64,000 nucleotides of DNA from Mytilus trossulus (Eukaryota). Position 1 is the first letter of the stretch; each line of letters opens with the position of its first letter. The notes beneath the pieces were generated by a model. The model saw only the letters and a list, made by a program, of their open reading frames with translations. It did no database searches and had not been told where the DNA came from. The position numbers were made by a program, and so were the translations under genes. Location: NCBI RefSeq assembly GCF_036588685.1, contig NC_086378.1, positions 9,052,001-9,116,000 of the forward strand, given 5' to 3'. Below are positions 1,132 through 61,897 of the stretch, piece after piece.

Positions 1132-4100
1132 AATAAAAGGTATATCCTATGCCAAGATAGAAAACCAGGTCCGTCGTGTTCCGAGTTACTCCCTGTATGA
1201 ATGCTTGCAAGGATGTCGTAGGTATTCATATCAGAACGAACTCCCTGAAATATTGAATAAAATAAACGGTTATTGATCTGCTTTATTTGACCTAAATACT
1301 CAATTTGCATTACTTAGCAGTGTTGAGTGTCCTGATATAACCCCTTGTAGAAATTAGCAAATCTTTAGCTACCAGTCTTGTATTACATCTCCCGTTTTCG
1401 GTGCATGTCAAAACACGGAGGGAAACAAGATATTGCATTTTTTTCGGAATTTTTTTCTGAACTCAATTTTTTCTGTTTGATTATAGGTTTGTGCTGAATT
1501 GAAACATATATATAGACTTTAAAAAAAATCTTGCATCTTTTGGGGATATCAATCCAAGAAGTGAAAGGATATCATGTTTACTGGAAGTGGTGCGGCCTAA
1601 AAAAAAATGTTTTGACTTCAGGATTGCGTAACATTTTTTTGTCGTGGCATGACCCCTTTTTTTCGATTAAATCACAATTTCACATTAGTACATACATGAT
1701 ATGAACATGAAAAGATCAGCTGTTTTGCATGTAAGCCTATGGAGCAGTCAATAACAAGACCGCAACCTTTACCAGTAAAATATTTTCTTCTTGCTGATGT
1801 TTAAATGGTGAATTGCTCGTCTCAAGGATGTACTTATGTAAGGTTTTGATAGTTTTATCAGATTTTTGGACTTCTTAGTTTTTTCCCGTATAATACAATG
1901 TAAAATATTGTGACCCATAACACCCATTTATCTTTTCATACAATACTTTTAAATAGCCCATAAACATTATAAAGGTCATATGCCTAAATTGAAGCAGATT
2001 CTTGATTTTTATTCTTTTGATTTGGGACCCTTATAATACAGAAGCAAATATACGGTAAAAGTCCGAGTCAGCCTTTTCCTGCCATATTTTCCATGAAAAT
2101 AAAATATCTCAAAAAGGAGATCCTTGACCTATCAGTATTTTTAGCTTATTTTGGTTCCTGAACTAATGCTCTTCCAACGTAATGTATCAATTTTAAATTA
2201 TTGATTCTTTGAATTTCACCTACGTACATCCTTAAGTTCAAGATAATTGACATTCGTCTACATTCATTAAATTTAACATTATATAATACAACTATTTGTG
2301 TTTGTGATATATAAAAGCTTAAGAGTATATTGCTATTTTTTGATTTTTTTTAATCGTTTATCATTATAAATGCAACATTTAATACACCTGTAAAATATTC
2401 AATGAACAAATATAATACAACACCCCCCCCCCCCTTTTAGTTTTTATTTCAGTTGACCTTCAGAAATATCATTTTATGAAAATGTGTTCTCTATTTTCTT
2501 TCATTCGTCTCACTTTCTAATTATAAGTAAAACAAAACCTCATACTAATTAATACAATTATATTTTCCTCTTCTTTTGTTCACTTTTTACTTTATTTTGA
2601 GATTAACACAAATTATCTTAATCTATCTTACAATAAAAACCATCCCAAAGTAACAATATCATCATATAGTAAAAGTGTATTTATTATGAGGACAATATCA
2701 TTATATAGTAAAAGTGTATTTATTATGAGGACAAAATAATAGATATTCAAAAACGTATTCGACTTTCGTTGCATTATCCTTTTGGTATCTTTCGCACCTC
2801 TTAAAAAAAAGACGAAACTGTAAACCTCTGTAAATGCATTTAAGTGCATTTACCGTATACATCATTTAAAATCTAAATGTAAGAGTACAAAAAGTTGTTG
2901 TACTTTAGAATTTTAAATAAAAATTTCATGAAACTATGGAGGATATTTATTCTTCCGCTATAAACAAATTATGGTCTTACTACAATAGTACTTACATAAT
3001 GGTACTTTAATCTCCGTACAGCCAGTGCGTAACGTAAGAAATTATTTTCGTATGGAGCTGCTCTGACTTCCCTCCTGATTGGTACACCACTAGCCTGCCT
3101 TTTGTGTCGAGAATTCGCCGTAGTATCAGCTTCACTGTTGATCTTTCTCCATAATGCCGATAAGAAATTTTTGGAACTTGTATCATTCAGCGTCTCTACT
3201 GCCGGTTGTAGGAATTGTTTGAAGCATATTATATCAATCCCCCTCTCAAAACAGTCTGTTTTGTAATAGGTGGCATTTGTTTGATTGTTCAAAGTATTTG
3301 CTTCTACATTTTGAAGAAAAGACGCTATGAGCAAAGACAGCAACAGACTGATCTGAAAAACAAAACCTATCAATGTTTAAAGATTTTTTGACGGTTTTCT
3401 GAAAAAATGTTACTACAATAAATTAATTAAGGTAGAAACTCATCTCTATGCAAGTTTTTTATTTGAAACAATTTTTATTTTAATAATCTTTTTTATCAAT
3501 TAACCTGTAGAAAAATCGATCAAGTACCAATAATGCACTGTCTAAAGTATACAAACTAGAATATGTGTTACTTATAGAAAGCCATACTTTTTAAATAAAA
3601 TAATATGTTTGGTATTTGTAAATTGTTTGGTATCTGACAATTGTTTGGTTTCTGTCAATCGGTTGGTATCTGTCAATTGTTTTGTTTCTGTCAATTGATT
3701 AACCATAAATGTTCAATTCAAATATCAATTTATTTTTTTATTATCATTTCATTACACGGATACTAATAGGTAATCATATTACAATGCATTTTGTATTGTA
3801 TAAAAGTTTCTTTTGTCTGAACAAAACCAATGAAATATATCTCATAATTTATAACATTGTTTTAAAGATCGTCAACTATATAGATATAAAAGTATAAATA
3901 GTAGAGGCCGATATTCCAGTAGACAACTTTCGAATTCGTGCACTTCCCCGTACATATTCTTTGTCACAATGCTCATGGTATTTCGTCACAGTAATCAGAA
4001 CCGATTGTTTAATGACGTCGATCAGAACAATTGACCGCATTCATTAAAAAATCAAATCGAGACCGTTGTTTAAGTCGGTGAATTTGAAAAGCGTTACTGT

Positions 4101-4398: not shown

Positions 4399-5535
4399 CC
4401 TACAACCGATCCAAGTGCAAATCCTGAATGAATGACTTTTGAGAGTAAATGTTTTGTTGAACAAAGTACATAATTATGATTAAATCAACATTCAATATGT
4501 TAATCAAATGACGGATTGTTACATTTTGCAATCAATTTGGTTTTGATTTACAAGGTAAATGCCCTCTCGAATGCACAATTAGAAAAACCACATGCATTTG
4601 AGGAAACGAAATACTCGTTGTTGAAATTTCATATACGAGCATGAATTTGGTAAAACCATGATACTACTTTTTAGTTTTTTTTATCGTTTCCCCTTTTATA
4701 CATATTGAACTTGCGATGAAACAAAAGAGTACACACAATTCCTCACAAATTTATCTTTTTGATAACTTGCTGAACTAATATGATACCTAAAAAAAACCAA
4801 GAAAAAACCAATAATCTTTAAATAACAAATACTAACCATGTGTTTTCTATTAGGTACTTGTAGGATGAGGAATAAAGCAGATATAATTATTGTTGTTTAA
4901 ATTTATTACTCTTTTTATAATGATAAAAATATAACAGGTATAAATGATGATGATGATGAAGATGATGATGATAGTTCACCTATTGCATGAAAAGACATTG
5001 AGGTGCTGAGCTCGATTCCCGTTCAATTCCGATATTAACTGATAAGATAACCGAGAATGCGGATTCTCTCTGTGTACTCTGATGTCCTCCACAAACAAAA
5101 ACCGGGCGACTCTATATAGTCACGAGCGCTGGAAAAGAAATAAAGTGATATGGAGTTTAGAATTGTAATGTACCCATTAATATTAGTTTTTTTTGGTACA
5201 ACATGTGGTTTTTTTGTTGTTTTTTGTTTGTTTTTTTTTGGGGGGGGGGGGGGGGGGGTAATTATCAATGCTTCGAACAGGTTAAATCATTTACGACTGA
5301 CTTGGGTATCACCAGCCCAGTAGTCCACACTTCGGTGTTGACATGAATATCAATAATGTGGTAATTTTTTGATAAAATTCCTGTTAACAAAAGTTTAACT
5401 TTTTCGAAAAACTAAGGATTTTCTTTTTCCAGGCATAGATTTCCTTAGCCGTATTGGGCACACCTTTTTGGAATTGTGGATCCTCAATGCTTTTCAACTT
5501 TGTTATTGTTTGGCTCTATAAATATTTTGATATGA

Positions 5536-5579
5536 GCGTCACTGATGAGTCTTATGTAAACGAAACGCGCGTCTGACGT
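5536..5579 (+). ncRNA. Type I hammerhead ribozyme (core intact, one stem II mismatch)
   Basis: GCGUCA CUGAUGA GUCU uaugu AAAC GAAA CGCGCG UC^ UGACGU; stem I GCGUCA/UGACGU; palindromic stem III ACGCGCGU; predicted cut after 5573. Confidence 0.85.
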
Positions 5580-5836
5580 ACTAAATTATAATCCTGGTTC
5601 CTTTGGGTATCACCAGCCCAGTAGTCAACACTTCGGTGTTGACATGAATATCAATAATGTGGTAATTTTTTGATAAAATTCCTGTTAACAAAAGTTTAAC
5701 TTTTTCGAAAAACTAAGGATTTTCTTTTTCCAGGCATAGATTTCCTTAGCCGTATTGGGCACAACTTTTTGGAATTTTGGATCCTCAATGCTCTTCAACT
5801 TTGTTATTATTTGGCTCTATAAATATTTTGATATGA

Positions 5837-5880
5837 GCGTCACTGATAAGTCTTATGTAGACGAAACGCGCGTCTGGCGT
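5837..5880 (+). ncRNA. Type I hammerhead ribozyme, G8A core variant (probably inactive)
   Basis: GCGUCA CUGAUAA GUCU uaugu AGAC GAAA CGCGCG UC UGGCGU; stems fully paired, core CUGAUGA changed to CUGAUAA. Confidence 0.75.
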
Positions 5881-8278
5881 ACTAAATTATAATCCTGGTT
5901 CCTTTGATAACTATTGTATTGTTTGTTCTTATGGTGTGCAGGTTTTGGAAAGTCTTGAACACTCACAAGCATGTTTAGCCCCGTGATATTCTATATATAC
6001 CAGTCCCAATTAAAATTATTTGTTTTACACTTGAATGTACATTTATTGCACTAAACCTGTTATAATATAATTATATGGATTTTCTTGTTTACATTTACCT
6101 AGAAGTTCAGTGTTTTTATAATTGTATGTTCTTACTAAGAAACCACATTGAAGGAAGATAAAGCATTTCAAGAACTTGAAGCAAGACTTACATTCCCTAG
6201 TAGTTGTATTTAAACTAAAACAATCTTTATTTAACTCTATTGGGGTTTAAACAATTAAAAGCAGATATGAACAAACTGTAGAATCCATGATAAAGACATC
6301 AGAAGTTAACAAAAAAACTCAAAATTTGACAAACAGATGATACAATTATGTCCTCCTTTCATCCAATAAGACAACACCGGATAAGACTTATCTGCGAGTT
6401 GTCATTACATGAACAACAAGACGGTAGTCAATATATGTTTTACTTTAGGGAATCTAAGAAAACTGTTGATTTTGGTAGGGTTTGTGATGCTCACGAATTT
6501 TAAGCTTTCCGTATCAAATTTGGTAAACTGCTTTTTTTGTAAGCTTGTCTTCAACTTTTGCAATCTTAAACGTCTCATTTCAGAAGCCTTGATTTTATTT
6601 CAAGCGAAGCTGACCATAAAAGAATTTGACAATTTCGTCGTTTTGTAATAATGCAGCTCGTAACGTTATTAAGTATTTGATAATCCCTGGCTTTCGATGA
6701 TTAGATATGAGTTTTCTTGAATAAGTATAGTCTAGAAAATCTCATCCGACTAACACAGTTAATCCAGTGTATATTTATCTATTCCCTTCCGCTCTTTTAA
6801 AATGCGGTTTGAAATCTTCCAACAGCTTCTTTCCTTCCACTCTTTGACTTTTAGATAATTAAAACTTGTATGTTTTTATCAATACGTTGTTTAACTGAAT
6901 CTGAAGTTGCGGTTTCAGTGTAAACGATTCACGAGGTAAAAAGTTGTAACAAATATTTCAAAAAATCAAATTTTAATCAGTGGTTCATAAAGTTTCAAAA
7001 CATATCACGTTTAACCAATTACAAAAAAAAAACCAGGAGAGATGTTTTCCGTGTTAAAACATAACAAAAGTTAAGTGTGATTGACGAGTTTCTAAAATTA
7101 ATATTTTGCAGAAATACAATTTTACAACTTTATTGTTCTATTCCTAGTTTTTACTGACTCATCATTTGACAAGATCGACATGTATACTTCAGCTGTCAAT
7201 ATGTCATTAAAATAAAATAAATATTCGTTTATGATGAGGATCATTTTTTACCCAATATCCTTATGTTTGAAAAAAAAAACAATTATTTGTCAAAAGTGTA
7301 AAGACAAATAGTTGGATTTTGTTTAACAGTCAATTGACGTGAACCAAGTGTTGAACACCGTACTTTGATATATAATTTGTTTACTTTTACAAATTTTGAC
7401 TTGGATGGACATGTGTGTCGTTTGCACCCATTCCACGTCTTCTTGTATCTATATACCTTCATTTTTGGTTCTAATCGCATGATATGCTTGAAAATAAAAA
7501 CAAAAGCGATGTTAACAAGGTTGTGTGTTTCAACTGCTCTTGATTTATTTTGACAATACGGTGCAGTAAATAAAAAATCAAACGAAAAGGTCGGTACCTG
7601 AAAAGGTCAATTGTTAACTGTTAGTGGCGGGCCTTTAGCAGAACAAATCACAGAATTCATACGAAATAGAATAAGATCAAGATTTTTTTTTTTTAAATAA
7701 AAAAATCAATATTAAAATCAACTCTGTACTATCCTTATCATACTGATAAACAAACATTTTAAATACAAGCCTCTGCAATGCATAAAAATTAATACATTTT
7801 CAAAAATGAATTCATAAAAATGAACAATGAAATAACACTTTGTAAATTGTTTGCGTATTCAATTATCTACCTTTACCACACAGAATAAAACTTCAAATAT
7901 TTTTTTATATTTTTTTATAATACTGAGGTACTTGTTTATGACTTTGTAAAGTAATTAACGGTCAGATTGTACCATATGTGTATTTTTACAATTTATGTCT
8001 CTCCAGTGATGCTCGGAGGGGCACAGATAAAGCATATAAACATAATAGAATTACCTCGTTTTTGGATTGTGCGAAAAACCTTTGAATACAATTAAATTAT
8101 CCTGTCGGTGTTTTTCATGACTTGTTTTCTGAATAGTATCGGTATGGTGAGTTGAGTTATTTTCAATAGTTTCGTAAACAGTTTGTTCATACTACTTTTC
8201 CATTTAAGAGGAATGGTTTGGTACTTATAAAAAATAAAAAAAACGCCTCATTCTGAATATATATAAATAATTTTTAAA

Positions 8279-8930: not shown

Positions 8931-9787
8931 ATATCGTAATAATTTTTTAATCTTGATCGTCCTTTTAGTTTGGTTCTCCATTGTGACTTTTCAACTCTCT
9001 AAAACACCATTTCAATCTTATCAAACGAAAGTATTCTTCTACTATGAAATCTGCGATGAAATAGTTAAAGCATGTATTTTCCCCTGAACAACGTCCGTTT
9101 CTGAAATAAACTTTTTGACAATTTTTCAGGTATTCTTATGGACACTAAATGTTTGCTTTTACAGCAGACATCTTCGTGTTTGTTTTGCTGTAGATTTGAA
9201 ATAATAAACAGTATATGACATCATTATTTTTAAGGTAATCCTATTTGTAAAGATTGTAAATTTAAAATCGACACATGTAAACTCGCAACCATTCTTAAAC
9301 TTATTTTTACTGTAAACCAATATAACACCGTGGTTAATTCTATCAATAAAGATTGAACAATGACAAACATTGTTTTTGTTTTGATAAACTACAACATAAC
9401 TAAACATTTACTTATATTCAGCTATGGAAAGTTATGGTCTTAAACCTGTCGAAATTTCGTACTAATGTTTTAACCTTGCACTAGGTCTGAATTCCGATGG
9501 GTGTGTACTGAATAATAAGTTAATATGAAAAGAACAAGGTTTTTATGAAGTTATTTGGATCAAATACTCACGTCATATTCTTTGACTTAACGGTATGGGC
9601 TCTAAATTTAACTTTCAGTGCCTATCATGTTTAAGTAAACTATACAGTTTGCTGTGATACCACTGTCCCAGATCAGAGACGGATTGAGCATACACACAAA
9701 TTTAAAATCCGTTCACATTATATCTTTGCCATTCTCAAATCAAGGGCAGTTCACTGGTTGTTGTAGGTTACTCTCTGTCTTTTTTTT

Positions 9788-10301
9788 TTATTTATTGGGT
9801 TTGTATAAAATTACGCTGTTGGTTTCATTTTAAGACTTTAAAGCTGATAACGTGGTTTGGGCTTTGGCAATTGAACCACATCATCTTCTTGTGCGTGTAT
9901 TTTCATACACGTCCATATTATTTTGAGGAGGTGCTGTAATTACAGCAAAAGAAGTTTCACAATATCTCAACGGTTACAACCAAACATGTTTTGATTTCTG
10001 TTTTTTTTTGTGTAGCTATCATTGATCATAGCACAACCTAGGGTTTATTTATTGGGTTTGTATAAAATTACGCTGTTGGTTTCATTTTAAGACTTTAAAG
10101 CTGATAACGTGGTTTGGGCTTTGGCAATTGAACCACATCATCTTCTTGTGCGTGTATTTTCATACACGTCCATATTATTTTGAGGAGGTGCTGTAATTAC
10201 AGCAAAAGAAGTTTCACAATATCTCAACGGTTACAACCAAACATGTTTTGATTTCTGTTTTTTTTTGTGTAGCTATCATTGATCATAGCACAACCTAGGG
10301 T
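9788..10301. repeat. Perfect 257-bp tandem duplication
   Basis: 9788-10044 equals 10045-10301; no differences seen on manual comparison. Confidence 0.92.
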
Positions 10302-10496: not shown

Positions 10497-13400
10497 TTAT
10501 GCACTAAAAACAGATACAGGACGAGTGTTCGGATCGATTTGAATTGCCGTAAACAAATTAAGAGGAGAGCCAGCCGGAATATCTTGTAATATTTCATTCC
10601 TGATATCTTGTAACGCTGTCACTGTTGTTGTCACATCTGCCATTCCAGACGCAATATCAATCGGAGCAACAGCTGCATCTGAAGCAAAGAAAGCAACATT
10701 GCCACCTGCACTTGGTGCACCTGATACTTCAGACGTTGCCTCTGTAGAAATACATATATCTCTATTTTGGTCACAGAATAAGTCTGGACTATTCGAACAC
10801 TGATTTTGACACGACGGGGCAGGTGCATATCGTCGCAGACGGGCATATATGTTACTGTAGCCTTCTCTATTTGTTATCGGAGGGTTTGGTTGGTATCTGT
10901 AATTGCTAAATCGCATTTGATCATCTGGTGGATGCAACGGAAAACCTAATGGATAATCTGCAGGAGCATTTGGAATACGTCTTCTAAACAACTCCCAGAC
11001 ATAGTCAACAAATGCATGATGGCACCAGAATATTGGATCAAATGCAGCACTAACCCCCGCTTCCATGTCTCCGCCTACCCAGACATGTACACTAGCGTGA
11101 TAACATTCCCAGCAATATCTACTTTGATCTTGTCGTACAATCTGACTATGACTTGTTCTTGATAGCACAGCCGCAATTGCGTTTTTAGAAATCAAACCTC
11201 CCGGACTATTAATTGCACGCCTTATTCTTCGCCCAGGTAAGTTTGCAAAAAAGCCTTCTGTAACTCGACCAAATGGTGTCCCAAAATATCTGTTTGAAAA
11301 TAAAACTGTTCTTGCCTGTCTATTTCCCATGGCCTGATCTAATGAAGAGTCCCAATATGGAGTAGTCACACCTGGTCCAAAAACAGCCTGCAGTGCAGCT
11401 TCATATCTGAAAAATATGAGAATAGTTCAAAATATTATATAGATATAAGAAGAAAAGTTATGAGTGTCACTAACCAAACACTTTATCCAAGTCACAATTT
11501 ATGTTAACAACTATAGGTCAAAGTGCGGTCTTCAACTCGAAGCCATGGCTCACACTCAACAACAAGCTATAAAGAGCCTGAAAAATTCAAACGGGAAAAC
11601 AAACGGTCTGATCTATATATAAAACGACGAGCCACATCAACAAACGACAACTTTGAACATCAGAAACCTATTTGTAAAAGAAAAACAAGGCATTCTTTCA
11701 CAAATCACGTAATCAGAATAAAAAAATAGAATAACACAATAAAATGCCATAAGTCTTTTTTTGAAATTCGGAGATTTTTTTCATAATCATTGCAATTTTA
11801 TTACTTATAAGATATTACTGGTCTGTTTATTTATCGACAGAAAAGATATTTGCAATTACGTGTATGTCGATTCCCCTGTTATTCTAACATTCTGATATCG
11901 TTTGTGGCATATAAAGGGCTGATATAACATTCTTGTTAATTTTAATGATACACTTTAATGCTTTCAAATCTACATTGATCTACAACCCTAAGTTATATTT
12001 GGAGTAAATAGTGAAACAATGTTTTTTTTTTACAGCAATACATTATTAACAAGTATAGGTTTATACAATAACTACTTGAACTTACAACAACAAATAAATT
12101 CTGTGCCATGAGAGGAAAGCTGAACCTCGATGTTCTCGATTTCCACCTGTGTGAATTGTTGCAATGATGTCATATGTATTCATATCCGGACGAACTCCCT
12201 AAAATATCAAAACATACTATAATGTATATGCTTCCATCAAACTTAAGAGAGAGTCTCGTTTTTAATTATAATTTTCAACTTTTTTAAGTATGGGTATAGT
12301 TTACTCATTTTGCTTGCATTCAAAGTCCTAACGTTCCATATATTGTTTATTCATACACAAGAATCAAAAGACATGTGGATTAATTTTTTGATTGATTGAT
12401 TGATCGGTCGTTATTTGCTAGCGTAACGCAGTGTAGCAAATAGTTCATGTATAAATATGCAAATAAGCGCTCAATATTATATGAAAGTTAAATAGTGGAA
12501 GCCAAACGAAATTCCTGAAATGGATTAATGGTTCGATCAAATTAAAGAAAATTTATTCCAGCTAAGTTGTAGAAAAATAAAGACAATAGTGTTTTATTCA
12601 AGTCATAAATTTGTGTGCTATTGTTTTTAATTAGTTACGTTTTTAGGAAATATTTTTTTAACAGTTCGTATTTTAAATTTAATAAAACCATTAGCACTTA
12701 ATCATAACGAGCTTTGTGCTTATTTGAACAGCGGTATACTACTGTGCCCTTTTTAGATTATGTTACTACATTTACCGAAGATGAGACCTTTAGTTTTGCT
12801 GTTTAGTTTTTACGTCACGTGTTATTTTTCAATGTTTTCTATTATTTCTAATGATCTTTATTTGGCACTTTTTAAACCACTTTTTGGACAACCTATATTT
12901 TAATACTTATGGAAGAAAAATGTTGGTGATTGTATTATTTATTGTTATTGTATGAGCATTTTTATTTGAACTTTCAAACAACTAATATGTATTTACACTT
13001 TGTTTCTTAATACAAAACCTAGTCTTTATCTTATTGAAACAATACTTACAAAATGGTTTTTCAACCTCTGTACAGCTTGTGCATAACGTAAAAAGTTGGT
13101 TTCGTATGGAGCTGCTCTCACTTCCTGTCTGACTGGTACCCCAGTCGCCTGCCTCTTATGTCGGGATTTACTAGCTTCATTCGCCTCACTGCTAATTTTT
13201 CGCCATAAAGCCGTTAGGAAATTGGAGGAACTTGTATCGTTAAGTGTGTCAGCAGCTGGTTTTAGAAATTTATTGAAGCATATTATATTGATCCCTCTTT
13301 CGAAACAGTCGGTTTTGTTATCTGTTGAATTAATTTTATATTGTATAAACTCTGCCTCAATGCCTGGGAGGATAATCGCCAGTAACATAAATAATGAAGG

Positions 13401-26656: not shown

Positions 26657-26910
26657 GAATAAACTCATCATAGATACCAGGACTAAATTTTGTATATTCG
26701 CCAGACGCGCGTTTTGTAACGAAAGACTCAACAGTGACGCTCGAATCCATCAAAATGTTAAAAAAGGCTAAATCAAGTACAAAGTTGAAGAGCATTAAGG
26801 ACAAAATTCCTAAAAGTTTTGCCAAATACAGCTTAGATAATCTATGCTTGAGGTAGAAAACCCTTATTGTTTCGCAAATTCTAAATTTTGCAAACAGTTA
26901 ATTTATAAAT
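26657..26910 (-). mobile_element. Retrozyme subfamily B fragment, degenerate hammerhead (26699-26741)
   Basis: Reverse complement gagcgtca CTGTTGA gtct..ttac AAAA cgcgcg tc tggcg, followed by the B-type flank tcctggtatctatgatgagtttatt. Confidence 0.75.
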
Positions 26911-32500: not shown

Positions 32501-35500
32501 TTTATGAGTTTTGAACATTGGTATACTATTGTTGCCTTAATTAAAATAACCCGCTACGTGTGTTATTTATTGTGCACTAAACTGTTTATGTTATTTCTTC
32601 ATTTATAGAAAAAATATTACAGTCATTCCTTAAATGCTTCAACTTTTTTTTATGATAGAAATGCATTGCACCCTAAAGCCATGACATATAAGCATGTATG
32701 AAAACAGAAATAAATATATTCTAAACCATATCAACTTGCACTTACAACAACAAATAAATTCTGTGCCACGAGAAGAAAGCTGGCCCTCTGTGTTCTTGAG
32801 GACTACCTGTGTGAATCATTGCAATGATGTCATAGGTACTCCTATCTGAGCGAATTCCCTGTAATTTTAAAAAATGAAATTTTTGATGCGGGTTTCGTAT
32901 TAATACTATTATTTTGTATGAATCTTTTATAACTACAATGTTGCCCTGTTATCAAGAGATTATGTGGCGAGATACTGTGCTGGAATACCTGATGACCCAA
33001 TATCACAAACATATAACAAATGGTGGTCGACATTTGAATCAAACGTTTTTCTGAAATGCATATCGTAAAGATAATTGTACACACGGAATAGAATTATCAT
33101 TTTTTTTTAAATATTCCTTGTGTGATTTTTTATCTTGTGGAAGTCTCCTGCTGAGGTCTCTTAAAATACTTAGTATTTTTTTGAATTCTCAATGCTCTTC
33201 AACTTAGTACTTTATTTGGCCTTTTTAAACTTTTTGAAATCGGGCGTCACTGATGAGATTTTGTAGACGAAACACGCGTCTGGCGTATGTACTAAATTTA
33301 GTCCTGGTATCTATGATGAGTTTATTTGTAATGTAAATGTGCATCGTTCTACATCAAACCTATTTTTTTCATGTAGTCTGGCATTATGAGAAGATTTCTG
33401 AAGTTGTCAATTTGTTATAAACATTGAGGTTCAAAGCAATTTTAATTCATGAGTTTTGACCAAAAAAATCCTCCGCTGTCTGCATTTCCTTTCAATTACA
33501 TAAACGCTTTAAAACCAGGTTTAATCAACGATTTTCTACATTTGAAATGCCAGTACCAAGTCAGGAATATGACCGTTCTTGTCCATTCGTTTTTGATGCG
33601 TATTGTTATTTGATTTTGCCATGTTATTATGGAAATTCCGAATTGATTTTCCTCTAAGTTCAGTATTTTTGTGATTTTACTTTTTTTTAAACATTCGATA
33701 ACCTGAAAAAATGTATGCTGACTCGGCACGGTTTGAAACATAATCTTATCTGCCATTATGTTAGTTCCAAGTCAAAAGCAAGTCTTTCAATTCTATCCGA
33801 TATCTCCTCTTGAAAACTTTTCTAAGCCTGGTATCAGTGAAGATTTTTTAAAAACTATATAATAATTGACTTGTTAAACAAGCCAGTTTGTGTTTATATA
33901 AAAACAAACTGTCGGACCTTATCCGAGATTGACGGAATGGCGTCACATAAAATATAGTTATGACAACTACTTTGTGAATTGACGCTGATATATTCTAAAA
34001 GATCTGTTCACAAATACCAATTTAAGGCCTTTTGACATTCGCCTAAAAAAATTAAGATGTTTCAATTTTGAACCAGTTGTATAACATTCTGGTTTCCTTC
34101 TTCTTAAAAAGGTCAACATATTTTAGAAGCGCAATAAGTCATTAACATTTACATGTTAAAATATATACATAAGGAAGACGCAAGTCTGTGTCGAACTTAA
34201 ATTGACCTTCCAATTTATTGTTTAGCCTCTTTATAGCAAGTGCATAACCATAATTACATGTTTAAATATATGAAAATAGAAGACACTCGTCTATGTCTAA
34301 CTACAACAATACTTACAAAATGATTTTTTAGCCTCTGTACAGCAAGTGCATACCATAGAAAGTTGGTTTCGTATGGACCTGCTCTTATTTCCCGTCGTAC
34401 TAGTTTTTTAGCAGCCCTTCGTTTATGGCGAGATTTAGAAGCTGTATCCGCCTCACTGTTTATCTTCCGATACAATGCATTTAGGAAATTTGTGGAACTT
34501 GTGTCATTAAGCGTAACTGCTGCCGGTTGTAGAAATTTCTTGAAACATTTTATATTGATGCCTCTCTCAAAACAATCTGTTACATGACCAGTGGAATTTG
34601 TTTGTAAACTTGAGATGTTTGGGAGGAAAGCCACCAGTAACACAGTCAACAATAGACTGCCCTACAAATAAATAAAGCTTTTAATGAACAAGAATATGAA
34701 ACAAAAATAAAATATAAAATTGATTGAAGAGGAAATTATTCTTGTGGTTTTCTTAATTATGTAAGGTTTGTGATGACCTTTCTATCAGTATACATGTTTG
34801 AAAAAGGCTTATACATCTTGAATTTTACTAAACAGTATGGAAAATAGTGTTAGATGTTATATAGATAATTATCCTTGTTATTTAAATTAATTCCAGCAAC
34901 AGTAGCTTATCAAAAAATCAAATCAAACATCGGAATAAATTATTCTTTTGTTGAAAAGGACATTATGTAAGGTAAAAACACGAGAGAACTAAAATATGAT
35001 AATTTTTAAACATGATTATCATATATTTTAAATGGGTACTATGGAAAATTAGAACTTCAATAAAATTTGACAAAACGCCTAAAGCACCGCAAGATATTTA
35101 TAAAATCTGGAAAGAAAACTTGAAAAATAATCTAAAATTTGTTCTTCTTTTGAAAGGCGTTGACATCATTTATTAGAAAAAAATGGAATCGGTAATAGTG
35201 ATAATTTAGACAGTAAATATAGTTTAAGCCTGAGTCAAAGTGCATTTTTCATGGTTTATCGTATAAGAATATCGATTTTATCAATTTATACAAACATAAA
35301 AAAAATTGTAAAAAAAGATTATTTCCCCCAAAAAGCATAAACATGAAGCAAAACATATTGTTAACTTTTTCTAACGTTTTGTTACATATACAGATTATCT
35401 GTCCAACATAAAATTTAATGAGATGTGGTGTGATTTACAATGAGGAAATTATCTAACATAATTATAAAGGCGTGTTTATAAGCAATTACTTATTATAGTT

Positions 35501-37564
35501 CATTGTACGGCCTTCTACAATACGAAAACAAATACTGTATAGTCAGCTAAAAAAAAATGACATGAAAATTCTGAAACAAACCAAACGAGAATACTTTAAA
35601 ACAATACAACAAGTTAGTTTATATTCTTTTTTTTTAGAAATTTAGTAAATAGAGAAGGATGCAACCTTCAGAGATCAACGTACCATGGTTCTGATTTAAC
35701 ACGCCAGACGCGCGTTCGTCTTCGTTAGACTTATTAGTGACGCTCAAATAAAAACAAATATTAAAGCAAAAAAAGCACAAACTTAAAGAGCATTGAGGAT
35801 ACAAAATTCCAATAAGTTATGCCGAAAAGCAGGCCTAAGGTAATTTATGCCAGGAATAAGAAAATTCTTCGTATGTCAAAAAATTCATAATTTGGTGAAC
35901 AGGAAATTCATAAAAATTACCATATAATTGATATTCATGTCAACATCGAAGTGCTGACTACTGTTCTGGAGTACCATCGGAGACGAAACGTTCACCAGAA
36001 GTGACATCGACCCAGTGGTGTAAATAGTTATCAAGTGTACCAGGCTTATAATTAAATACGCCGGACGCGCGTTTCGTCTACATTAGACGCATCAGTGACG
36101 CTCAGAATAAAATAGTTATAAAGACAAATAAGTACAAAGTTGAAGATCGTTGAGGATGATGAAGGATGGTCATATTTAAATCGTTTTTTGTTGTTGTATT
36201 TCTATAGAATGTGTGATGAAGTTATGAAGGTATGAAGATACACATGCAAAACATTTAAAATCAGGAACACTGGTTATTTTTCATCATGAAACTAAATGCA
36301 ATTGCTGGAAAAATTAAAAACCTCTTGACCTTATAACAATCATATTCTGTGTTAAAAGAAAATCAAGCAGCATGATATGAAATCATACAGAAGGGCTAAA
36401 TAAACTTTTGATAAACGGATAACACTTAAGCTTAAAATTTCATTCAGACATTTGTTTTTGTTAATATACAGATGTTGGAAAAAATGTGTCATGCGAAGAC
36501 CGATTATTATACGATATTGTAGCAAGCAATTTCTGGAAATACATAAATATTTTTTCCAAAAAATATTTATAGCTGCAAATAAAAGCGGGCAAAAGGAAAA
36601 ACTCTTTTTTTTTTTTTTGCCGTTTCAAGCAAAAATAATATCAAGGCAACAGTAGTAATTCCTTGTTTAAATCTTGTTATACTTAAAACAGAGAAACGTA
36701 GAGAAAATAAATAAAATTTCGGATCTCACATAGACTCCAAAAGGGATGAGATCGAGTGCGACGACATAGTATGCATCTCATGCTATGAATGAATCGCCCG
36801 TTTTTTGTATACTCGTTTAGTCATGATGAGGTTCACTTAGGGCACAAAACGGCCCAAAATATTAACTTTATCATAAAACACCAAAATTATTACATTTTGG
36901 TTTGGTAATGGATCTGTTTCAAAAGCCTTAATACTAAATAAATCAGTTATTTTCATAAAAGAACAAAATATTCTTCAAAGTAGGCATTTTTTTACATTTT
37001 GTCAAAATATGATGATTTTGTGCAATTTTCAGACCTAAAAGCTTTCAGAAAACCTGGAACAACACCTATGATCCAAATTGTTTTGTAACCGAGAGATTCG
37101 AATGTTGATATTGAATTCATCAACATAAAAAAAAATTGAATCGTGGATGGCGTCCAAGGGTAATTATGCAAAAAACAATTGAAATTATGGAAAACCTTGA
37201 CAAAAATTTACCTAAAAACCTTGACAAAAATTTACCTAAAATACAAATATGGTTTATTAATGGTTCATAGCTTCATAAATTGTGAAGGAAGTGCCATAAA
37301 AATATGTTTTTGTCTTAATATTATATCACAAGTTTTTCTATGTCAAATTTGTATTATTGTGGCCTGGTTTAAAAAAATATTAAAAATGTAGGGCCAATTT
37401 CGACCTTCCTTAACGTTCGCAATCGGTAAGAGGACACACTCGGTAAAATTACAAAACATACACCGATACTCGTAATTAGTTATCAGAGTTACTAGGATTA
37501 TAATTTGATACGCCAGACTCTTGTAATTTTACAAACAACTTACCCATGTTCTCTCGAGACCCAT
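29567..37564 (-). CDS. Tyrosinase-like secreted protein, paralog 4 (449 aa)
   Basis: Exons 37544-37564 (MGLERTW|gtaagt), 34317-34661 (RHKRR), 32746-32858 (IHTGSPQEHRGPAFFSWHR), 29567-30437 (EGYHNSVHRW...FDPIFWCHH). Total 1350 nt, in frame. Confidence 0.92.
31127..31324. repeat. Tandem 4 x ~51-bp repeat of the family D end
   Basis: atataggaagatgtggtatgagtgccaatgagacaactcttcatccaatag units starting at 31127, 31177, 31228 and 31279. Confidence 0.9.
33180..33327 (+). mobile_element. Retrozyme subfamily B fragment with hammerhead 33244-33286 (antisense in paralog 4 intron 2)
   Basis: GCGTCA CTGATGA gattttgtagac GAAA cacgcg TC TGGCGT; core intact, stems II and III weakened; B-type 3' flank. Confidence 0.75.
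35672..36160 (-). mobile_element. Retrozyme subfamily A, ~1.4 units (357-nt spacing), two degenerate hammerheads (35701-35743, 36058-36101), sense in paralog 4 intron 1
   Basis: Homologous to the 5302-5913 repeat; cores read CUAAUAA/GAA and CUGAUGC. Confidence 0.8.
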
Positions 37565-50184: not shown

Positions 50185-50343
50185 TAGATTACCTTAGCAG
50201 TATTTGGCACAATATTTTGGAATTTTGGGTCCCCAATGCTCTTCAACTTTGTATTTGTTTGGCTTTATAACTATTTTTATCTGAGCGTCTCTGATGAGTC
50301 GTATGTATGTATGTATGGCGTATTGAATTATATTTCTGGTACC
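50185..50343 (+). mobile_element. Retrozyme subfamily A fragment; hammerhead destroyed by (TATG)n
   Basis: gcgtct CTGATGA gtc gtatgtatgtatgta tggcgt; flanks match subfamily A. Confidence 0.75.
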
Positions 50344-55400: not shown

Positions 55401-57236
55401 AACACATACAAAATGTATTATGAGAATAACTATGACGTCTCTACGTTTTAATTACCGAAATAAAAGTATATGCTGTCAATTATTGAAATATTAATTATTG
55501 CAGGGATTGTGGTTGATTTTCATGTGATTTACCATGTTTCTTCTGTTACCTATTCTAACATTTTTTTAACTGAGTTTTATTGTGGGGTTTAATGTCTGTT
55601 GGTTTTTTTTTCAATTTGGCTTGAGGTTTAGGGAAAGAGTTGAGATCTAACAAAACATAGTTAACACTTCCGCATTTTTGCGTTTGTCGTCCTTATGCAG
55701 ACGTTTGGTCTGTGATTTGTCGGTTCTATCCGATTTAAGCTCGTAAAAGTTTTCATTAGTTCTTGATTTTCATTATGGGTGATACATGCGAGAGACGCTT
55801 GTCCTTTCAAAACATCCGATTTTTCTACGTTTGAAACCCATGGAAAAAGTAAAATCACAAAAATACTGAAAATCAATAAGAAAGTCCATAATCACATGGC
55901 AAAATCAAATAACAAAACGCATCAAAAACGAATGGACAAGAACTGTCATATTCCTGACATACACTTTCAAGGCATTCTACATATGAAGACCATGGGATAC
56001 AGATTAAAATAATTCAGGAGTTCTACGTTTGAAAACCATGGGATACCATAAAAGCATCACGTCTTTCTAAGTATGATGACCATAGGATACCCTGTAAAAG
56101 CATCCTGTCTTTCTACGTTAGATGTCCATTGGAGACACTTTCAGAGCATCTAGTCGTTTTACGTTTGAAGACAAAGGGATACCCTTCAAATCATCCAGTA
56201 TTTCTACGTATGAAGACCATGTAATACCCTGTCATAGAATCTGGTCTTTCTACGTTTGATGACCATAGGATACGTTGTCAGAGCATACAGTCTTTCTGCG
56301 TATAAAGTCCATATGATACCCTGTCAAAACATCCGATTTCTACGTTTGAAGAGTTCAAGACCATGAAAAACTCTGTCAAAGCATCCAGTCTTTCTACGTT
56401 TGAAGACCATGAATTTCCCAGTATGTTATCCCTTGTTTTTTGTATTCAAAAGCGAATTACGAATTTTTAAATATCGGTAAAATGCGTAAGCACCTTCTGT
56501 GTAATTCTATCATAGATCGAGATTTTTTTTGTATTTATTTGTGTCATGGATAAATAAACTCATTTTAGATACCAGGATGAAGATTTGTATTTACGCCAGA
56601 CGCACGTTTCGTCTACAAAAGACTCATCAGTGACGTTCGAATCTAACAAGTTTAAAAGGCCAAATAATATGCGAAGTTGAAGAGCATTGCTTAATATAAA
56701 TTAATTTATGTAGTATAAGCTTATTAATTGAAATTTGGAAATAAAAAAACAAATAACCGTGATATAAATCAAATAAAGAAATCAAGAATAAAAACAAAAC
56801 AAAAAGAAAACGGGTTGCTTATTATCATGAAAAGATTCCTTATAATTGCATATCTTCCCAAAAGTTCACAACATCTTCAAGAGTATTATCACGAAAATGT
56901 CGACTTCGACTGGTTGTGCTACGATTATAGAAACATTGATGCCCTCCTGCTCCTTATGTATTTTAATTGTTCTCGTTATTGGATTGCCATCCTCTATTAT
57001 TCTTTTGTTATACAGTTTGATCGTTACTGCATATCGTGCACATATTATGGCAATAAATAACTTGAAAGAAATAAGAAATATTTCAACGTCCAACATGATT
57101 ATTTTTCATATATGTAAACAAAAAATTGGGTTATAAAAACGAGCAAATGTATTGATTTCAAAGTAAAATATAAAAGTATGTCATTTTTTTTCTCAAAATC
57201 AAATAATATACTAACCAATGTGCTGCAGGTATGCAT
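52423..57236 (-). CDS. Tyrosinase-like secreted protein, paralog 5 (476 aa)
   Basis: Exons 57216-57236 (MHTCSTL|gttagt), 54913-55266 (RHKR), 53625-53737 (IHTGSNREHRGSAFFSWHR), 52423-53365 (EGYHNMVHRW...FDPIFWCHH). Total 1431 nt, in frame. Confidence 0.93.
55790..56412. repeat. Degenerate ~43-bp minisatellite interrupted by a family C fragment
   Basis: Recurring tttctacgtttgaagaccatgggataccctgtcaaagcatccagtc, about 11 units; family C insert at ~55843-55960. Confidence 0.85.
56553..56690 (-). mobile_element. Retrozyme subfamily B fragment in paralog 5 intron 1
   Basis: B-type flank (aataaactcat...gataccagga) plus hammerhead and the aagttgaagagcattg block. Confidence 0.8.
56593..56636 (-). ncRNA. 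Type I hammerhead ribozyme, fully intact
   Basis: ACGUCA CUGAUGA GUCU uuugu AGAC GAAA CGUGCG UC^ UGGCGU: stem I 6/6 pairs, stem II 4/4, canonical core, GUC triplet; predicted cut between 56599 and 56598. Confidence 0.88.
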
Positions 57237-61078: not shown

Positions 61079-61246
61079 TTGGTTATCAAAAGTACCAGGA
61101 TTATAATTTTATACGCCAAACGCGCGTTTCGGATACATAAGACTCATCAGTGACGCTCAGATCGAAATAGTTAAAAAGCCAAATAAATACAAAGTTGAAG
61201 AGCATTGAGGATCCAAAATTCCAAAAAGTTGTGCCAAATACGGCTA
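61079..61246 (-). mobile_element. Retrozyme subfamily A fragment, hammerhead 61113-61156 with broken stem II
   Basis: gcgtca CTGATGA gtct tatgt atcc GAAA cgcgcg TT tggcgt plus A-type flank. Confidence 0.78.
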
Positions 61247-61325
61247 ATAAATAAATTGATAAAACGTGTCGAATTTGAATAACAAACTTTAAGTCTAAAT
61301 TTTAGTAAATATAACGCCATAACGC

Positions 61326-61897
61326 AATGGCGCCTTCGTAGCAAAGAGTTCTAATTAAGTTGTTCATCACTAGCCATATGTGAGTTCGAACCCAACATGT
61401 GGCAGATGCATTCGATTTTTAATTGACTAGGATTGCATTTCTTCCTTCCAAAGGTCGGTGGTTCCCCAAAGACATTCCGGCTTGCTCAACCAATAAAACG
61501 AAACGCCACGATAAAGCCAGTAGTGGTGAAAATAAAGTCATCATAGATACCAGAATAAAAAAATTGTGTTTTCGCAAAACGAGCGTTTCGTCTACAAAAG
61601 ACTCATCAGTGTCGATTGAGTCCAAAAAAGTTTATAAGGCAAAATAAAGTACGAAGTTAAAAAGTAATCAGGATCGATGTTCCTAAAAGTTTGGCCAGAT
61701 ACACCTATGTAATCTATTCCTGATGAAGAAAAGCATAAGTATTCCAACAATTCAAATTTTTGTAAACATTTAGTTCAAATTTATGGCCATATTAATGATA
61801 ATTCATGAAAAACAGATGTGCTAATTACTGGGCTAGACAGAATAAGAATACGTTGTTGTAAATGAACTTATCATGAAAGTGGTGATAAACCCCAACA
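61326..61897 (+). mobile_element. tRNA-derived SINE (split by the retrozyme)
   Basis: B-box GTTCGAACC at 61384-61392; central ggtcggtggtt...ccggcttgctcaaccaataaaac..gccacgat domain resembling mollusc SINE cores; tail tgaaagtggtgataaac resumes at 61874. Confidence 0.6.
61532..61873 (-). mobile_element. Retrozyme subfamily B near-full monomer (~342 nt) inserted in a SINE; hammerhead 61572-61615
   Basis: CTGATGA gtct tttgt agac GAAA core with decayed stem I; terminal redundancy (ataaagtcatca / atgaacttatca); flanked by TGAAA direct repeats. Confidence 0.75.

What the first reader, a model, noticed from the sequence alone, without database searches (positions are those of the whole stretch)
5302..5913. 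A common 'repeat' here is a self-cleaving hammerhead ribozyme element (retrozyme); a local dimer has complementary defects
Seen: each 301-bp unit contains a minimal type I hammerhead (stem I GCGUCA/UGRCGU, CUGAUGA, stem II, GAAA, palindromic stem III ACGCGCGU, GUC cut site). About ten copies in two subfamilies (loop II uaugu vs uuugu, different 3' flanks) occur in this 64 kb. Established: minimal type I hammerheads with palindromic helix III cleave best as dimers, and tandem copies yield small circular RNAs. From memory, such retrozymes have been reported in Mytilus, so the family itself is probably not new. Inference: this dimer arose locally via TTG microhomology and lacks ~56 nt of the 357-nt unit. 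Copy 1 has an intact core with a stem II mismatch; copy 2 has fully paired stems but G8A. It should therefore cut once rather than release a circle.
Basis: partly seen in the sequence, partly recalled or inferred. Interest (0 to 1): 0.8.

Follow-up and report, generated by a model that had tools for sequence, protein, structure and literature searches.

The report
Decayed mussel hammerhead retrozyme dimer
This is a worn, apparently silent two-unit copy of an already published family of small mussel mobile repeats that each carry a self-cutting hammerhead RNA motif, so it is ordinary, although its ends and odd internal joint hint at how such repeats are copied into DNA.

Summary
5302-5906 is a 2.0-copy, 301-bp tandem repeat (97% alike), and each unit carries a type I hammerhead motif (Rfam RF00163: 31.4 and 25.9 bits, gathering 34). 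It is a copy of a very abundant 357-bp family of this 1.3-Gb mussel-like genome: 10,617 exact copies of the intact 38-nt ribozyme core. The family matches the published Mytilus galloprovincialis retrozymes in unit size, two ribozyme subfamilies and RNA expression. This scan has already noted such elements many times in this genome (152 notes).

- **Defects:** both are real and arose after the two units separated. They are G8A in copy 2 and a C·A mismatch in helix II of copy 1.
- **Joint:** the 56-nt-short joint is unique in the genome.
- **Cut site:** Folding favours the double hammerhead, in which each core cuts the other copy's site. The one efficient cut would then be at 5874|5875, not 5573|5574.
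- **Expression:** no RNA read touches the flanks, so local transcription is unsupported.
- **New detail:** the family has fixed ends (5' at unit 85-88, 3' at 38-41) flanking a GC-rich hairpin. The local dimer may have arisen when reverse transcription skipped that hairpin.

The parts
5304..5915 (+). The whole local retrozyme insertion: two units without the usual 56-nt inter-unit segment, with the family's canonical 5' end (GGGTATC, unit position 88) and canonical 3' end (...GATAACTATT, unit position 41).
   Evidence: Family homology starts at query position 3 of the unit, i.e. 5304. The upstream flank 5240-5303 is not family-like: local score 16 against shuffles 14.8±2.1, and 101 of 300 shuffles score as high. 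All 6 arrays inspected end at ...GATAACT(ATT).
5302..5602 (+). Repeat copy 1 (301 bp). It carries 6 derived substitutions: 5326, 5463, 5476, 5492, 5559 and 5576.
5603..5903 (+). Repeat copy 2 (301 bp). It carries 2 derived substitutions: 5809 and 5848.
5536..5579 (+). Hammerhead 1. The core CUGAUGA 5542-5548 is intact. Helix II has a C5551·A5559 mismatch. The helix III palindrome is 5565-5572. The cleavage site lies after C5573.
   Evidence: RF00163 31.4 bits, E 7.8e-4; sequence; the non-canonical pair is listed.
5837..5880 (+). Hammerhead 2. The core reads CUGAUAA (A5848 = G8A). Helix II is fully paired. The helix III palindrome is 5866-5873. The cleavage site lies after C5874.
   Evidence: RF00163 25.9 bits, E 0.052; sequence; G is ancestral in 13 of 13 family units.
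5594..5616 (+). The joint between the copies (5602|5603). It joins unit position 31 (...CCTTTG) directly to unit position 88 (GGTATC...) and lacks the 56-nt segment.
   Evidence: The 23-mer is found exactly once in the genome. The two 3-mismatch hits read ...CCTGAGGGTATC and ...CCCGAGGGTATC, like the S-segment end of normal units. The 80-mer is contiguous only here, in 1 of 49 scored matches.
5907..5915 (+). Terminal ATAACTATT, the family's fixed 3' end.
   Evidence: RNA and DNA reads leave the window sequence at 5915 and continue with the 56-nt segment (tables 5 and 7).
35682..36157 (-). A 1.3-unit copy of the same subfamily with the full 357-nt spacing. Both of its hammerheads are broken: A9C in one, and G5A, G8A and GAAA>GAA in the other.
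56592..56689 (-). Fragment of the second subfamily (loop II uuugu). It holds the only fully intact hammerhead in the window (56593-56636).
   Evidence: RF00163 32.9 bits, E 2.5e-4.
61094..61247 (-). Fragment of the first subfamily. Helix II is broken and the site reads GUU.
61579..61834 (-). Diverged copy of the second subfamily.
26676..26909 (-). Diverged copy of the second subfamily. The core reads CUGUUGA and GAAA has become AAAA.
33179..33308 (+). Fragment of the second subfamily with helix II broken.
50185..50307 (+). Fragment of the first subfamily. The 3' half of its hammerhead is deleted.

Best explanation
5304-5915 is one decayed genomic copy of an abundant non-coding, non-LTR retrozyme family of a mussel-type genome, of the kind published for Mytilus galloprovincialis.

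**How the family works (from the literature, not shown here).** Tandem units are transcribed. The type I hammerhead in each unit cuts the RNA into unit-length pieces. A host RNA ligase closes these into about 357-nt circles. A retrotransposon reverse transcriptase, probably from a Penelope-like element, copies them back into DNA as head-to-tail arrays.

**The local copy.**
- It has the family's canonical ends but only two units.
- The units are joined without the 56-nt GC-rich inter-unit segment.
- After the two units separated, copy 2 lost the essential G8 of its catalytic core, and copy 1 acquired a mismatch in helix II.

**Predicted behaviour (inferred).**
- Helix III is an 8-nt palindrome with no room for a stable loop. 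The favoured active fold of a two-unit transcript is therefore the double hammerhead, in which the core of one copy is assembled around the cleavage site of the other.
- The weakened but intact core of copy 1 would then cut after C5874.
- The dead core of copy 2 would leave C5573 uncut.
- If each motif instead folds alone, the one cut moves to 5573|5574.
- Either way there is one inefficient cut and no 301-nt monomer or circle.

The locus lies between two minus-strand tyrosinase-like genes, with the ribozymes on the opposite strand. It shows no sign of transcription, so it is most likely an inert relic.
For: **Family identity.**
- The unit search found 6,317 first-look candidates. Of these, 39 were scored, giving 77 matches at 87-94% identity in 354-359-bp tandem arrays.
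- The intact 38-nt ribozyme has 10,617 exact copies.
- RF00163 on the whole genome scored 74 candidates. 48 had E<=0.001, and 42 of those were above gathering.
- Two subfamilies are present.
- GC is 35-38%.
- These features fit the published description: about 5,000 type I hammerheads in two ribozyme families, within 350-390-bp repeats, giving abundant circRNA (PMC7229834, passages).

**RNA.**
- Two raw RNA runs from two studies laid 4,001 and 2,237 reads on the repeat at 90% likeness or more.
- In X21 the first mate lies on the minus strand 2.5-5 times more often. In most stranded libraries that means the RNA is of the ribozyme strand.
- Reads run from 5915 through the 56-nt segment back to 5605 (X21 52+345 reads, X24 36+23).
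- No pile of ends at either cleavage site reaches the tool's threshold.

**Local facts.**
- The joint is unique.
- All 8 differences between the copies are derived: 6 in copy 1 and 2 in copy 2, judged against 13 of 13 family units.
- The two copies share rare variants, so they are sister copies.

**Fold.**
- Co-folding two copy-2 45-mers gives exactly the double hammerhead at -30.9 kcal/mol. The single-hammerhead fold is -6.4, and the non-ribozyme monomer MFE is -9.6.
- For the transcript 5536-5881 the unconstrained MFE (-78.1) already contains the inter-copy 8-bp helix III.
- The enforced double hammerhead is -74.1, against -58.5 for two single hammerheads.

**Dimer mechanism in the literature.** PMC4209133, PMC6155905 and PMC6466107 (passages). 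G8 as the likely general acid: PMC6155905.

**Context.** A tyrosinase exon lies at 10497-11369 on the minus strand (PF00264, E 8e-18). RNA depth in the flanks is essentially 0.
Against: - No window copy reaches Rfam's gathering score.
- No cleavage was measured. The size of the G8A effect is recalled from classic mutagenesis, not read here.
- The review PMC7761336 (passage) states that most invertebrate type I hammerheads form a stable helix III and cut well as monomers.
- The mussel construct in PMC7229834 cut at about 0.1 per min, but the text I saw does not say whether as monomer or dimer.
- Energy models ignore tertiary contacts and co-transcriptional folding.
- Short reads cannot tell circles from uncleaved multimers, so circularity of the family RNA rests on the paper.
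- The raw RNA runs are from 'organism B'. The best DNA holder, and the only run covering the local flanks well, is 'organism A'. The locus might simply be absent from the RNA samples' genome.
- Species identity and sequence identity with the deposited clones (MN642551-MN642576) could not be checked. The paper's supplementary figures with the ribozyme consensus were closed.
Confidence: 0.8

Rival explanations
1. Each hammerhead folds and cuts on its own (cis). Copy 1 therefore cuts after C5573 and copy 2 is dead. The dimer arose after insertion, by a 301-bp tandem duplication or a 56-bp deletion between TTG microhomologies.
For: - PMC7761336 says most invertebrate type I hammerheads cut efficiently as monomers.
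- Helix III can form 2 bp plus a GCGC tetraloop.
- TTG stands at 5302, 5603 and 5904.
- Tandem duplications are common.
Against: - The single-hammerhead fold is 15.6 kcal/mol worse than the double one in the two-unit transcript. It is not the MFE of the isolated motif.
- PMC4209133 says such short palindromic helix III motifs are poor as monomers.
- The left TTG overlaps the family's canonical 5' end. A post-insertion duplication would therefore need its breakpoint to fall on that boundary by chance.
- The flank shows no trace of the 56-nt segment.
Confidence: 0.3
2. The 301-nt unit is a replicating deletion variant. A shortened circular RNA was copied by rolling-circle reverse transcription and should have sister insertions elsewhere.
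For: The two copies share rare variants, and the joint is clean.
Against: - The joint 23-mer occurs exactly once in 1.3 Gb, even allowing 3 mismatches.
- Only 5 shortened joints exist, against 6,143 normal ones, and no two are alike.
- RNA reads reaching 5605 from upstream carry the 56-nt segment (430 reads in X21).
Confidence: 0.03
3. It is a plain satellite or tandem duplication, and the hammerhead resemblance has no catalytic meaning.
For: All window copies fall below Rfam's gathering score.
Against: - All 15 core positions and the three helices are present in copy 1, with E 7.8e-4.
- 42 genome copies exceed gathering.
- The intact core has 10,617 identical copies.
- Self-cleavage and circRNA are published for mussel repeats of this description.
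Confidence: 0.02

Closest known systems
Non-LTR retrozymes of Mytilus galloprovincialis (Cervera & de la Pena, Nucleic Acids Res 2020; PMC7229834)
   Same: - Tandem 350-390-bp low-GC non-coding repeats, each with a type I hammerhead.
- Two ribozyme subfamilies and thousands of copies.
- Abundant RNA.
- No LTR, primer-binding site or polypurine tract.
   Different: - The local copy has a 301-bp spacing because it lacks the 56-nt inter-unit segment, and both of its ribozymes are damaged.
- Sequence identity with the deposited clones could not be tested.
- This assembly holds more than 10,000 exact cores, against about 5,000 motifs reported for an older draft assembly.
Newt satellite 2 and axolotl retrozyme hammerheads; ASBVd double hammerhead (Forster et al. 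1988, as cited in PMC4209133, PMC6155905 and PMC6466107)
   Same: - Short helix III with a palindromic loop.
- Two tandem motifs merge their helices III into one long helix, and activity rises in dimers.
   Different: - Here the palindrome is 8 nt (ACGCGCGU) and helix I is a plain 6-bp stem.
- The mussel motif is reported to lack the usual loop 1-loop 2 contacts.
- Dimer dependence of the mussel ribozyme has not been shown.
Minimal hammerheads of Penelope-like elements (Cervera & de la Pena 2014, PMC4209133; Lunse et al. 2017, not held)
   Same: - Type I topology.
- Tandem arrangement and a proposed dimeric action.
- They co-occur with retrozymes. PLEs are the proposed source of the reverse transcriptase.
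   Different: - PLE min-HHRs lack helix III nucleotides and have a longer helix II. They sit in pseudo-LTRs of a 3-4.6-kb coding element.
- Here there is no ORF and helix II has 4 bp.
- One PLE family of this genome shares a 29-nt stretch with the retrozyme's 3' tail. Its own arrays end 415-420 nt further on, and Rfam finds no hammerhead in it.

Membership tests
Hammerhead ribozyme, type I (Rfam RF00163) | Conserved core: C3 U4 G5 A6 N7 G8 A9, G12 A13 A14, A15.1-U16.1, H17. | tested here: met
   Copy 1 has every core position (5542-5548, 5562-5565, 5572, 5573). Copy 2 fails at G8 (A5848). The feature is therefore met for copy 1 and for the ancestral unit (13 of 13 family units), but not for copy 2.
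Hammerhead ribozyme, type I (Rfam RF00163) | Three helices around the core, with the open ends in helix I. | tested here: met
   Helix I has 6 bp. Helix II has 4 bp, with 3 standard pairs in copy 1. Helix III forms either 2 bp plus a GCGC loop, or 8 bp between copies.
Hammerhead ribozyme, type I (Rfam RF00163) | Score at or above the curated gathering threshold of 34 bits. | tested here: not met
   The scores are 31.4 and 25.9 bits. The intact family motif scores 33.0. 42 other copies in the genome pass, the best at 40.9.
Hammerhead ribozyme, type I (Rfam RF00163) | [quoted passage not shown] | not testable with these tools
   No pile of read ends at 5573|5574 or 5874|5875 reached the tool's threshold. 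That fits mostly ligated or uncut RNA and proves nothing either way.
Metazoan non-LTR retrozyme | Head-to-tail repeats of about 150-450 bp, each with a type I hammerhead, low GC, and no LTR, PBS, PPT or ORF. | tested here: met
   (GC 0.35-0.38). No ORF of 70 aa or more lies within 5302-5913.
Metazoan non-LTR retrozyme | Expressed as unit-length linear and circular RNA. | tested here: inconclusive
   Family RNA is present in 2 of 2 raw RNA runs laid, and it is continuous across unit boundaries. Circularity cannot be read from short reads. No read supports transcription of this locus.
Metazoan non-LTR retrozyme | Sequence relationship to the published mussel clones (MN642551-MN642576). | not testable with these tools
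   The accession numbers are given in PMC7229834.
Double (dimeric) hammerhead | A palindromic helix III/loop 3 and a second copy in the same RNA, with the dimer fold more stable than the monomer fold. | tested here: met
   ACGCGCGU is self-complementary and the two copies lie 301 nt apart. The energies are -74.1 against -58.5 kcal/mol, and the co-fold MFE is the double hammerhead. This is thermodynamic prediction only.
Double (dimeric) hammerhead | Cleavage at one site depends on the core of the other copy. | not testable with these tools
   This follows from the pairing scheme. The classic mutational proof in ASBVd is recalled, not read.
Penelope-like element minimal hammerhead | The motif lies in the pseudo-LTR of an RT/GIY-YIG-coding element and lacks helix III nucleotides. 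| tested here: not met
   There is no coding element here, and helix III nucleotides are present.

The most novel reading that the evidence does not exclude
The family's 78-nt GC-rich hairpin region (unit positions 33-110) may be the landmark that the reverse transcriptase uses on the circular RNA. Its predicted stability is -29.3 kcal/mol, z -2.9.

**Proposed mechanism.**
- Copying starts just 5' of the hairpin, which would give the fixed 3' end at unit positions 38-41.
- After one or more rounds, copying tends to stop at the base of the apical stem, which would give the 5' end at unit positions 85-88.

**Application to the local dimer.** It would then be the product of a single insertion event, not of a later duplication. 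The enzyme jumped across the hairpin from position 88 to position 31 and stopped at the same place one round later. That would explain three facts:
- the joint and the element's 5' boundary fall on the same nucleotide;
- TTG recurs three times;
- the joint is unique.

**Evidence in hand.**
- 135 places have non-family sequence directly upstream of GGGTATC, against 1 at a control position.
- 16 of 20 sampled places are true element starts.
- All 6 arrays inspected share the 3' end.
- Two other loci have a canonical 3' end abutting a unit that starts at position 90 or 91.
Probability: 0.35. Interest if true: 0.5.

Novelty: already known. Interest (0 to 1): 0.27.

Why it matters
As given, the finding matters little. 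The repeat belongs to a described class and almost certainly to a described family, and this copy is a relic. Two things go beyond that.

1. **A natural two-allele test.** The locus has one dead core and one weakened helix II. It could show whether mussel retrozyme hammerheads cut in cis or in trans. On this point the published statements disagree: PMC4209133 differs from PMC7761336.
2. **Sharply defined family ends.** A hairpin lies between them, and this gives a concrete, testable picture of how animal retrozymes are reverse-transcribed from circles. The papers I read leave that step open. They only name PLEs as 'strong candidates'.

Tried and rejected
1. **Is the flank 5240-5303 a diverged copy of the 56-nt segment?** No. 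The local alignment score is 16, against shuffles of 14.8±2.1. A 21-nt AT-rich minus-strand patch (score 22) was judged to be chance.

2. **Is G8A under-represented in RNA?** Inconclusive.
- RNA reads show non-G at 5848 in 3.6% (X21, 67 of 1,844) and 5.8% (X24, 49 of 847).
- DNA contig depth gives 12-13%.
- Exact 38-mer counts give 134 against 10,617, i.e. 1.25%.
- The three measures are not comparable, so I draw nothing from them.

3. **Helix III covariation.** 18 of 20 top Rfam hits carry ACGCGCGU. These hits were chosen by a model that rewards that sequence, so the result is biased and uninformative.

4. **Circular-RNA stability.** The MFE of the 357-nt and 301-nt circles is only about 1.3 sd below mononucleotide shuffles. 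This is not distinctive.

5. **Bacterial promoter/terminator scan.** It is irrelevant for a eukaryote, and the counts are at shuffle level.

6. **Is a Penelope-like element with the same tail the mobiliser?**
- Of 16 GIY-YIG loci fetched, 4 share a 29-nt stretch (89-93%) with the retrozyme's last 29 nt. All 4 belong to one 4.6-kb family, and two of them (L042 and L046) overlap on the same C9 stretch.
- That element's arrays end 415-420 nt further downstream, with an unrelated terminus.
- Rfam finds no hammerhead in it.
- The link is therefore unproven.
- The search with 160 nt around the motif returned only full-length matches, because only the best 40 of 720 candidates were scored. It could not show termini.

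7. **A 6-mer CAGGTT on both sides of the element.** I noticed it by eye in the sequence, without a count, and I take it for chance, not a target-site duplication.

8. **Literature.** A search for 'G8A' gave nothing useful. Lunse et al. 2017 (PMC5785218) is not held. Supplementary files of PMC7229834, which hold the ribozyme consensus, cloned circles and primers, were not seen. They could confirm or refute family identity.

Full report
**What is there.** Window 5302-5906 is a perfect-register tandem repeat of 301 bp: 2.0 copies, 97% matches, no indels. Each copy holds a type I hammerhead motif that can be read directly from the sequence.

- Copy 1 has helix I GCGUCA/UGACGU (5536-5541 with 5574-5579) and the core CUGAUGA (5542-5548).
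- Its helix II is GUCU-uaugu-AAAC, with a C5551·A5559 mismatch.
- It continues with GAA, the 8-nt palindrome ACGCGCGU (5565-5572) and the cleavage-site C at 5573.
- Copy 2 is the same 301 nt further on. Helix II is fully paired, but the core reads CUGAUAA, with A5848 at position G8.

**Rfam scores.** Rfam's Hammerhead_1 model does not reach its gathering score anywhere in the window.

- In E-value mode it finds copy 1 at 31.4 bits (E 7.8e-4) and copy 2 at 25.9 bits (E 0.052). It also finds four other window copies.
- The undamaged family ribozyme scores 33.0 bits, one bit under the threshold (8 of 10 hits on three family loci).
- The threshold, not the motif, is therefore the reason for the blank.
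- 42 variant copies elsewhere in the genome do pass. 74 candidates were scored, and 48 had E<=0.001.

**The family.** The window's genome is 1.30 Gb in 541 contigs. Fourteen of these look chromosome-sized, judging from the contig lengths.

- Runs that hold the stretch are labelled with coded organisms and with 'mollusc metagenome' and 'gill metagenome'.
- I take it for a Mytilus-type mussel. That identification is an inference.
- The 301-bp unit finds 6,317 first-look candidates. The 77 matches from the 39 scored candidates are 87-94% identical, start at query position 3 or later, and stand in arrays spaced 354-359 bp, mostly 357.
- The intact 38-nt ribozyme occurs 10,617 times exactly.
- In the window there are ten copies or fragments of two subfamilies.
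- This fits the published description of M. galloprovincialis retrozymes (PMC7229834, passages read): about 5,000 type I hammerheads in two ribozyme families, within 350-390-bp repeats.
- The paper also reports self-cleavage at about 0.1 per min and circular RNAs at high levels in gonad and mantle.
- I could not compare sequences. The clones are in GenBank (MN642551-MN642576) and the consensus is in closed supplements.
- This scan has noted hammerhead retrozymes in this same genome many times before (152 notes).

**RNA.** I laid two raw RNA runs from two studies (organism B) and two DNA contig sets on 4900-6300 at 90% likeness.

- 4,001 RNA reads (X21) and 2,237 RNA reads (X24) landed on the repeat. 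Most were 90-95% alike, so they come from other family members.
- In X21 the first mate lies on the minus strand 2.5-5 times more often. In most stranded libraries that means RNA of the plus, ribozyme-bearing strand. X24 is balanced.
- Reads leave the window at 5915 and re-enter at 5605, with the 56-nt segment in between (joint 5915>5605: X21 52+345 reads, X24 36+23).
- The loose ends before 5605 read ...GCCACTGCTGGTGGACGTTTCGTCCCCGA in 430 X21 reads. The expressed form is therefore the 357-nt one.
- No pile of molecule ends is listed at 5573|5574 or 5874|5875. This fits RNA that is mostly ligated or uncut, but short reads cannot show circles.
- Depth in both flanks is zero in both RNA runs, apart from a small unrelated repeat at 6028-6074. 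Nothing shows that this locus is transcribed.
- The caveat is that only the organism-A DNA run covers the local flanks well. The locus may not exist in the RNA samples' genome.

**The local peculiarities.**

- The joint is unique. An 80-mer across it is contiguous only here (1 of 49 scored matches).
- The 23-mer is found exactly once. The two 3-mismatch hits read like the S-segment end of normal units, and the reversed control gave 1 hit.
- Between the same two anchors, 6,143 places have the normal 50-80-nt gap and 5 have a gap of 0-30. All five are different.
- The eight differences between the two copies are all derived. 13 of 13 family units, from five arrays of which two are duplicates of each other, carry the other base.
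- Six changes fell in copy 1. These include G>A at 5559, which breaks a helix II pair, and G>A at 5576, which turns a U·G into a U-A pair in helix I.
- Two changes fell in copy 2, including G8A at 5848.
- The copies also share about a dozen differences from the family, several of them rare in the DNA reads. They are therefore sister copies, and the ancestral dimer had two intact ribozymes.

**How it would work.**

- Helix III can form only two pairs and a GCGC loop within one copy. It forms eight pairs between two copies.
- Co-folding two copy-2 45-mers gives exactly the double hammerhead as the minimum-energy structure (-30.9 kcal/mol). The single-hammerhead fold is worth -6.4 and is beaten by a non-ribozyme fold at -9.6.
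- In the transcript 5536-5881 the unconstrained optimum (-78.1) already contains the inter-copy helix III.
- Enforcing the double hammerhead costs 4 kcal/mol (-74.1). Enforcing two single hammerheads costs 19.6 kcal/mol (-58.5).
- In that structure the 5' strand of helix I, the CUGAUGA box, helix II and GAA of one copy surround the C17 and the 3' strand of helix I of the other copy.
- The G8A core of copy 2 therefore faces C5573, and the intact but weakened core of copy 1 faces C5874.
- The site it named (5571-5573) follows only from cis action, which contradicts its own premise that these motifs work as dimers.
- The literature is divided. PMC4209133 says metazoan type I motifs with short palindromic helix III are poor monomers and fold into active dimers. 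PMC7761336 says most invertebrate motifs cut well as monomers.
- G8 is described as the likely general acid (PMC6155905). The magnitude of the G8A loss I only recall.

**Ends of the family, and a different origin for the dimer.** I number the unit from the first nucleotide after the cleavage site.

- All six arrays I inspected end at positions 37-42, at ...CCTTTGATAACT(ATT). Five of them are independent, and their 5' ends vary.
- One 5' end is strongly preferred. Sequence unlike the 56-nt segment stands directly upstream of GGGTATC (position 88) at 135 places. An equivalent pattern at a control position in the unit gives 1 place.
- The two anchors are about equally frequent in my loci: 21 against 13.
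- Of 20 such places fetched, 16 have flanks unrelated to the family, so they are true starts. 8 of those 16 begin CGAGGG. The other 4 of the 20 are small internal deletions.
- At two other loci a canonical 3' end abuts a unit that starts at position 90 or 91.
- Between the two ends lies a GC-rich hairpin. The 78 nt at positions 33-110 fold at -29.3 kcal/mol, z -2.87, with 3 of 200 shuffles as good.
- The local element has both canonical ends: 5304 is position 88 and 5915 is position 41. Its joint connects position 31 to position 88.
- The upstream flank shows no trace of the missing segment.
- A later tandem duplication would need its left breakpoint to coincide with the element's boundary.
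- A reverse transcriptase that tends to halt at the hairpin explains the coincidence and the triple TTG. It would once have jumped across the hairpin, then stopped there a round later.
- I rate this origin at roughly 50-55% against 40% for post-insertion duplication. It is inference.

**Who copies it.** The papers name Penelope-like elements as candidates.

- I found many GIY-YIG-coding elements (149 matches).
- One 4.6-kb family shares 29 nt (89-93%) with the retrozyme's last 29 nt. It appears in 4 of the 16 loci examined, two of which overlap.
- Its own arrays end 415-420 nt further on with an unrelated terminus, and Rfam finds no hammerhead in it.
- The link stays open.

**Context.** A tyrosinase exon lies at 10497-11369 on the minus strand (PF00264, E 8e-18). 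A signal-peptide-like ORF with no Pfam hit lies at 2969-3373 on the minus strand. The dimer sits between them with its ribozymes on the plus strand. Read-through from these genes would produce the non-ribozyme strand.

**Verdict.** The local inferences are partly right. The thing itself is a known element in a decayed copy. Interest is low. The modest extra value lies in the cis/trans test that the two defects offer, and in the sharply defined ends of the family.

Noticed in passing
window 5186-5249: A T-rich run is followed by 22 consecutive G, about 55 nt upstream of the element. DNA reads 'seem cut' at 5204-5268. On the minus strand it reads C22 followed by an A-rich tract. It may be the tail of another element or a hard-to-assemble stretch.
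   Followed up: no
window 10497-11369 (-) and 2969-3373 (-): A tyrosinase central-domain exon (PF00264, E 8e-18) lies here. About 7 kb away there is a signal-peptide-like ORF without a Pfam hit. Tandem tyrosinase-like paralogues appear to flank the retrozyme copy, as another note on this window also says.
   Followed up: partly
G000:C9:8150500-8167999 (L046+L049), G000:C4:16013000-16022999 (L050), G000:C2:7816000-7833000 (L051+L045): This is a young Penelope-like element family with a 4.6-kb unit, a long ORF with a GIY-YIG domain, and partial-tandem insertions.
- Their 5' truncation varies, and the arrays end at a fixed point (...GTGATTTTACTTTT).
- The element contains an internal 29-nt stretch nearly identical to the retrozyme's 3' tail.
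- It also has about 260-bp internal repeats near its end.
- Retrozyme fragments lie right next to two of the three insertions.
   Followed up: partly
genome-wide; e.g. G000:C11:58415549: The G8A form of the otherwise identical 38-nt ribozyme occurs at 134 scattered places, against 10,617 for the G8 form. One of them is the unit that follows another shortened joint (L052). This is probably recurrent G>A decay, and I did not examine it further.
   Followed up: partly
G000:C1:113730-118368 and C1:269295-295175: Very long, highly homogeneous arrays of the intact family unit lie near the start of contig C1, with dozens of units at 354-355-bp spacing. They are candidates for the transcribed source loci.
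   Followed up: no
G000:C8:52331090-52331800 (L012): In one array the 5' flank ends with TTTGATAACTATTT, the same 14 nt as the element's own 3' tail. Either the insertion went into a tail-like target or into the remnant of an older copy, or the flank is a long target duplication.
   Followed up: no
window 9787-10301: A perfect 257-bp x 2.0 tandem repeat (100% matches) lies just beside the tyrosinase exon. I did not examine it.
   Followed up: no
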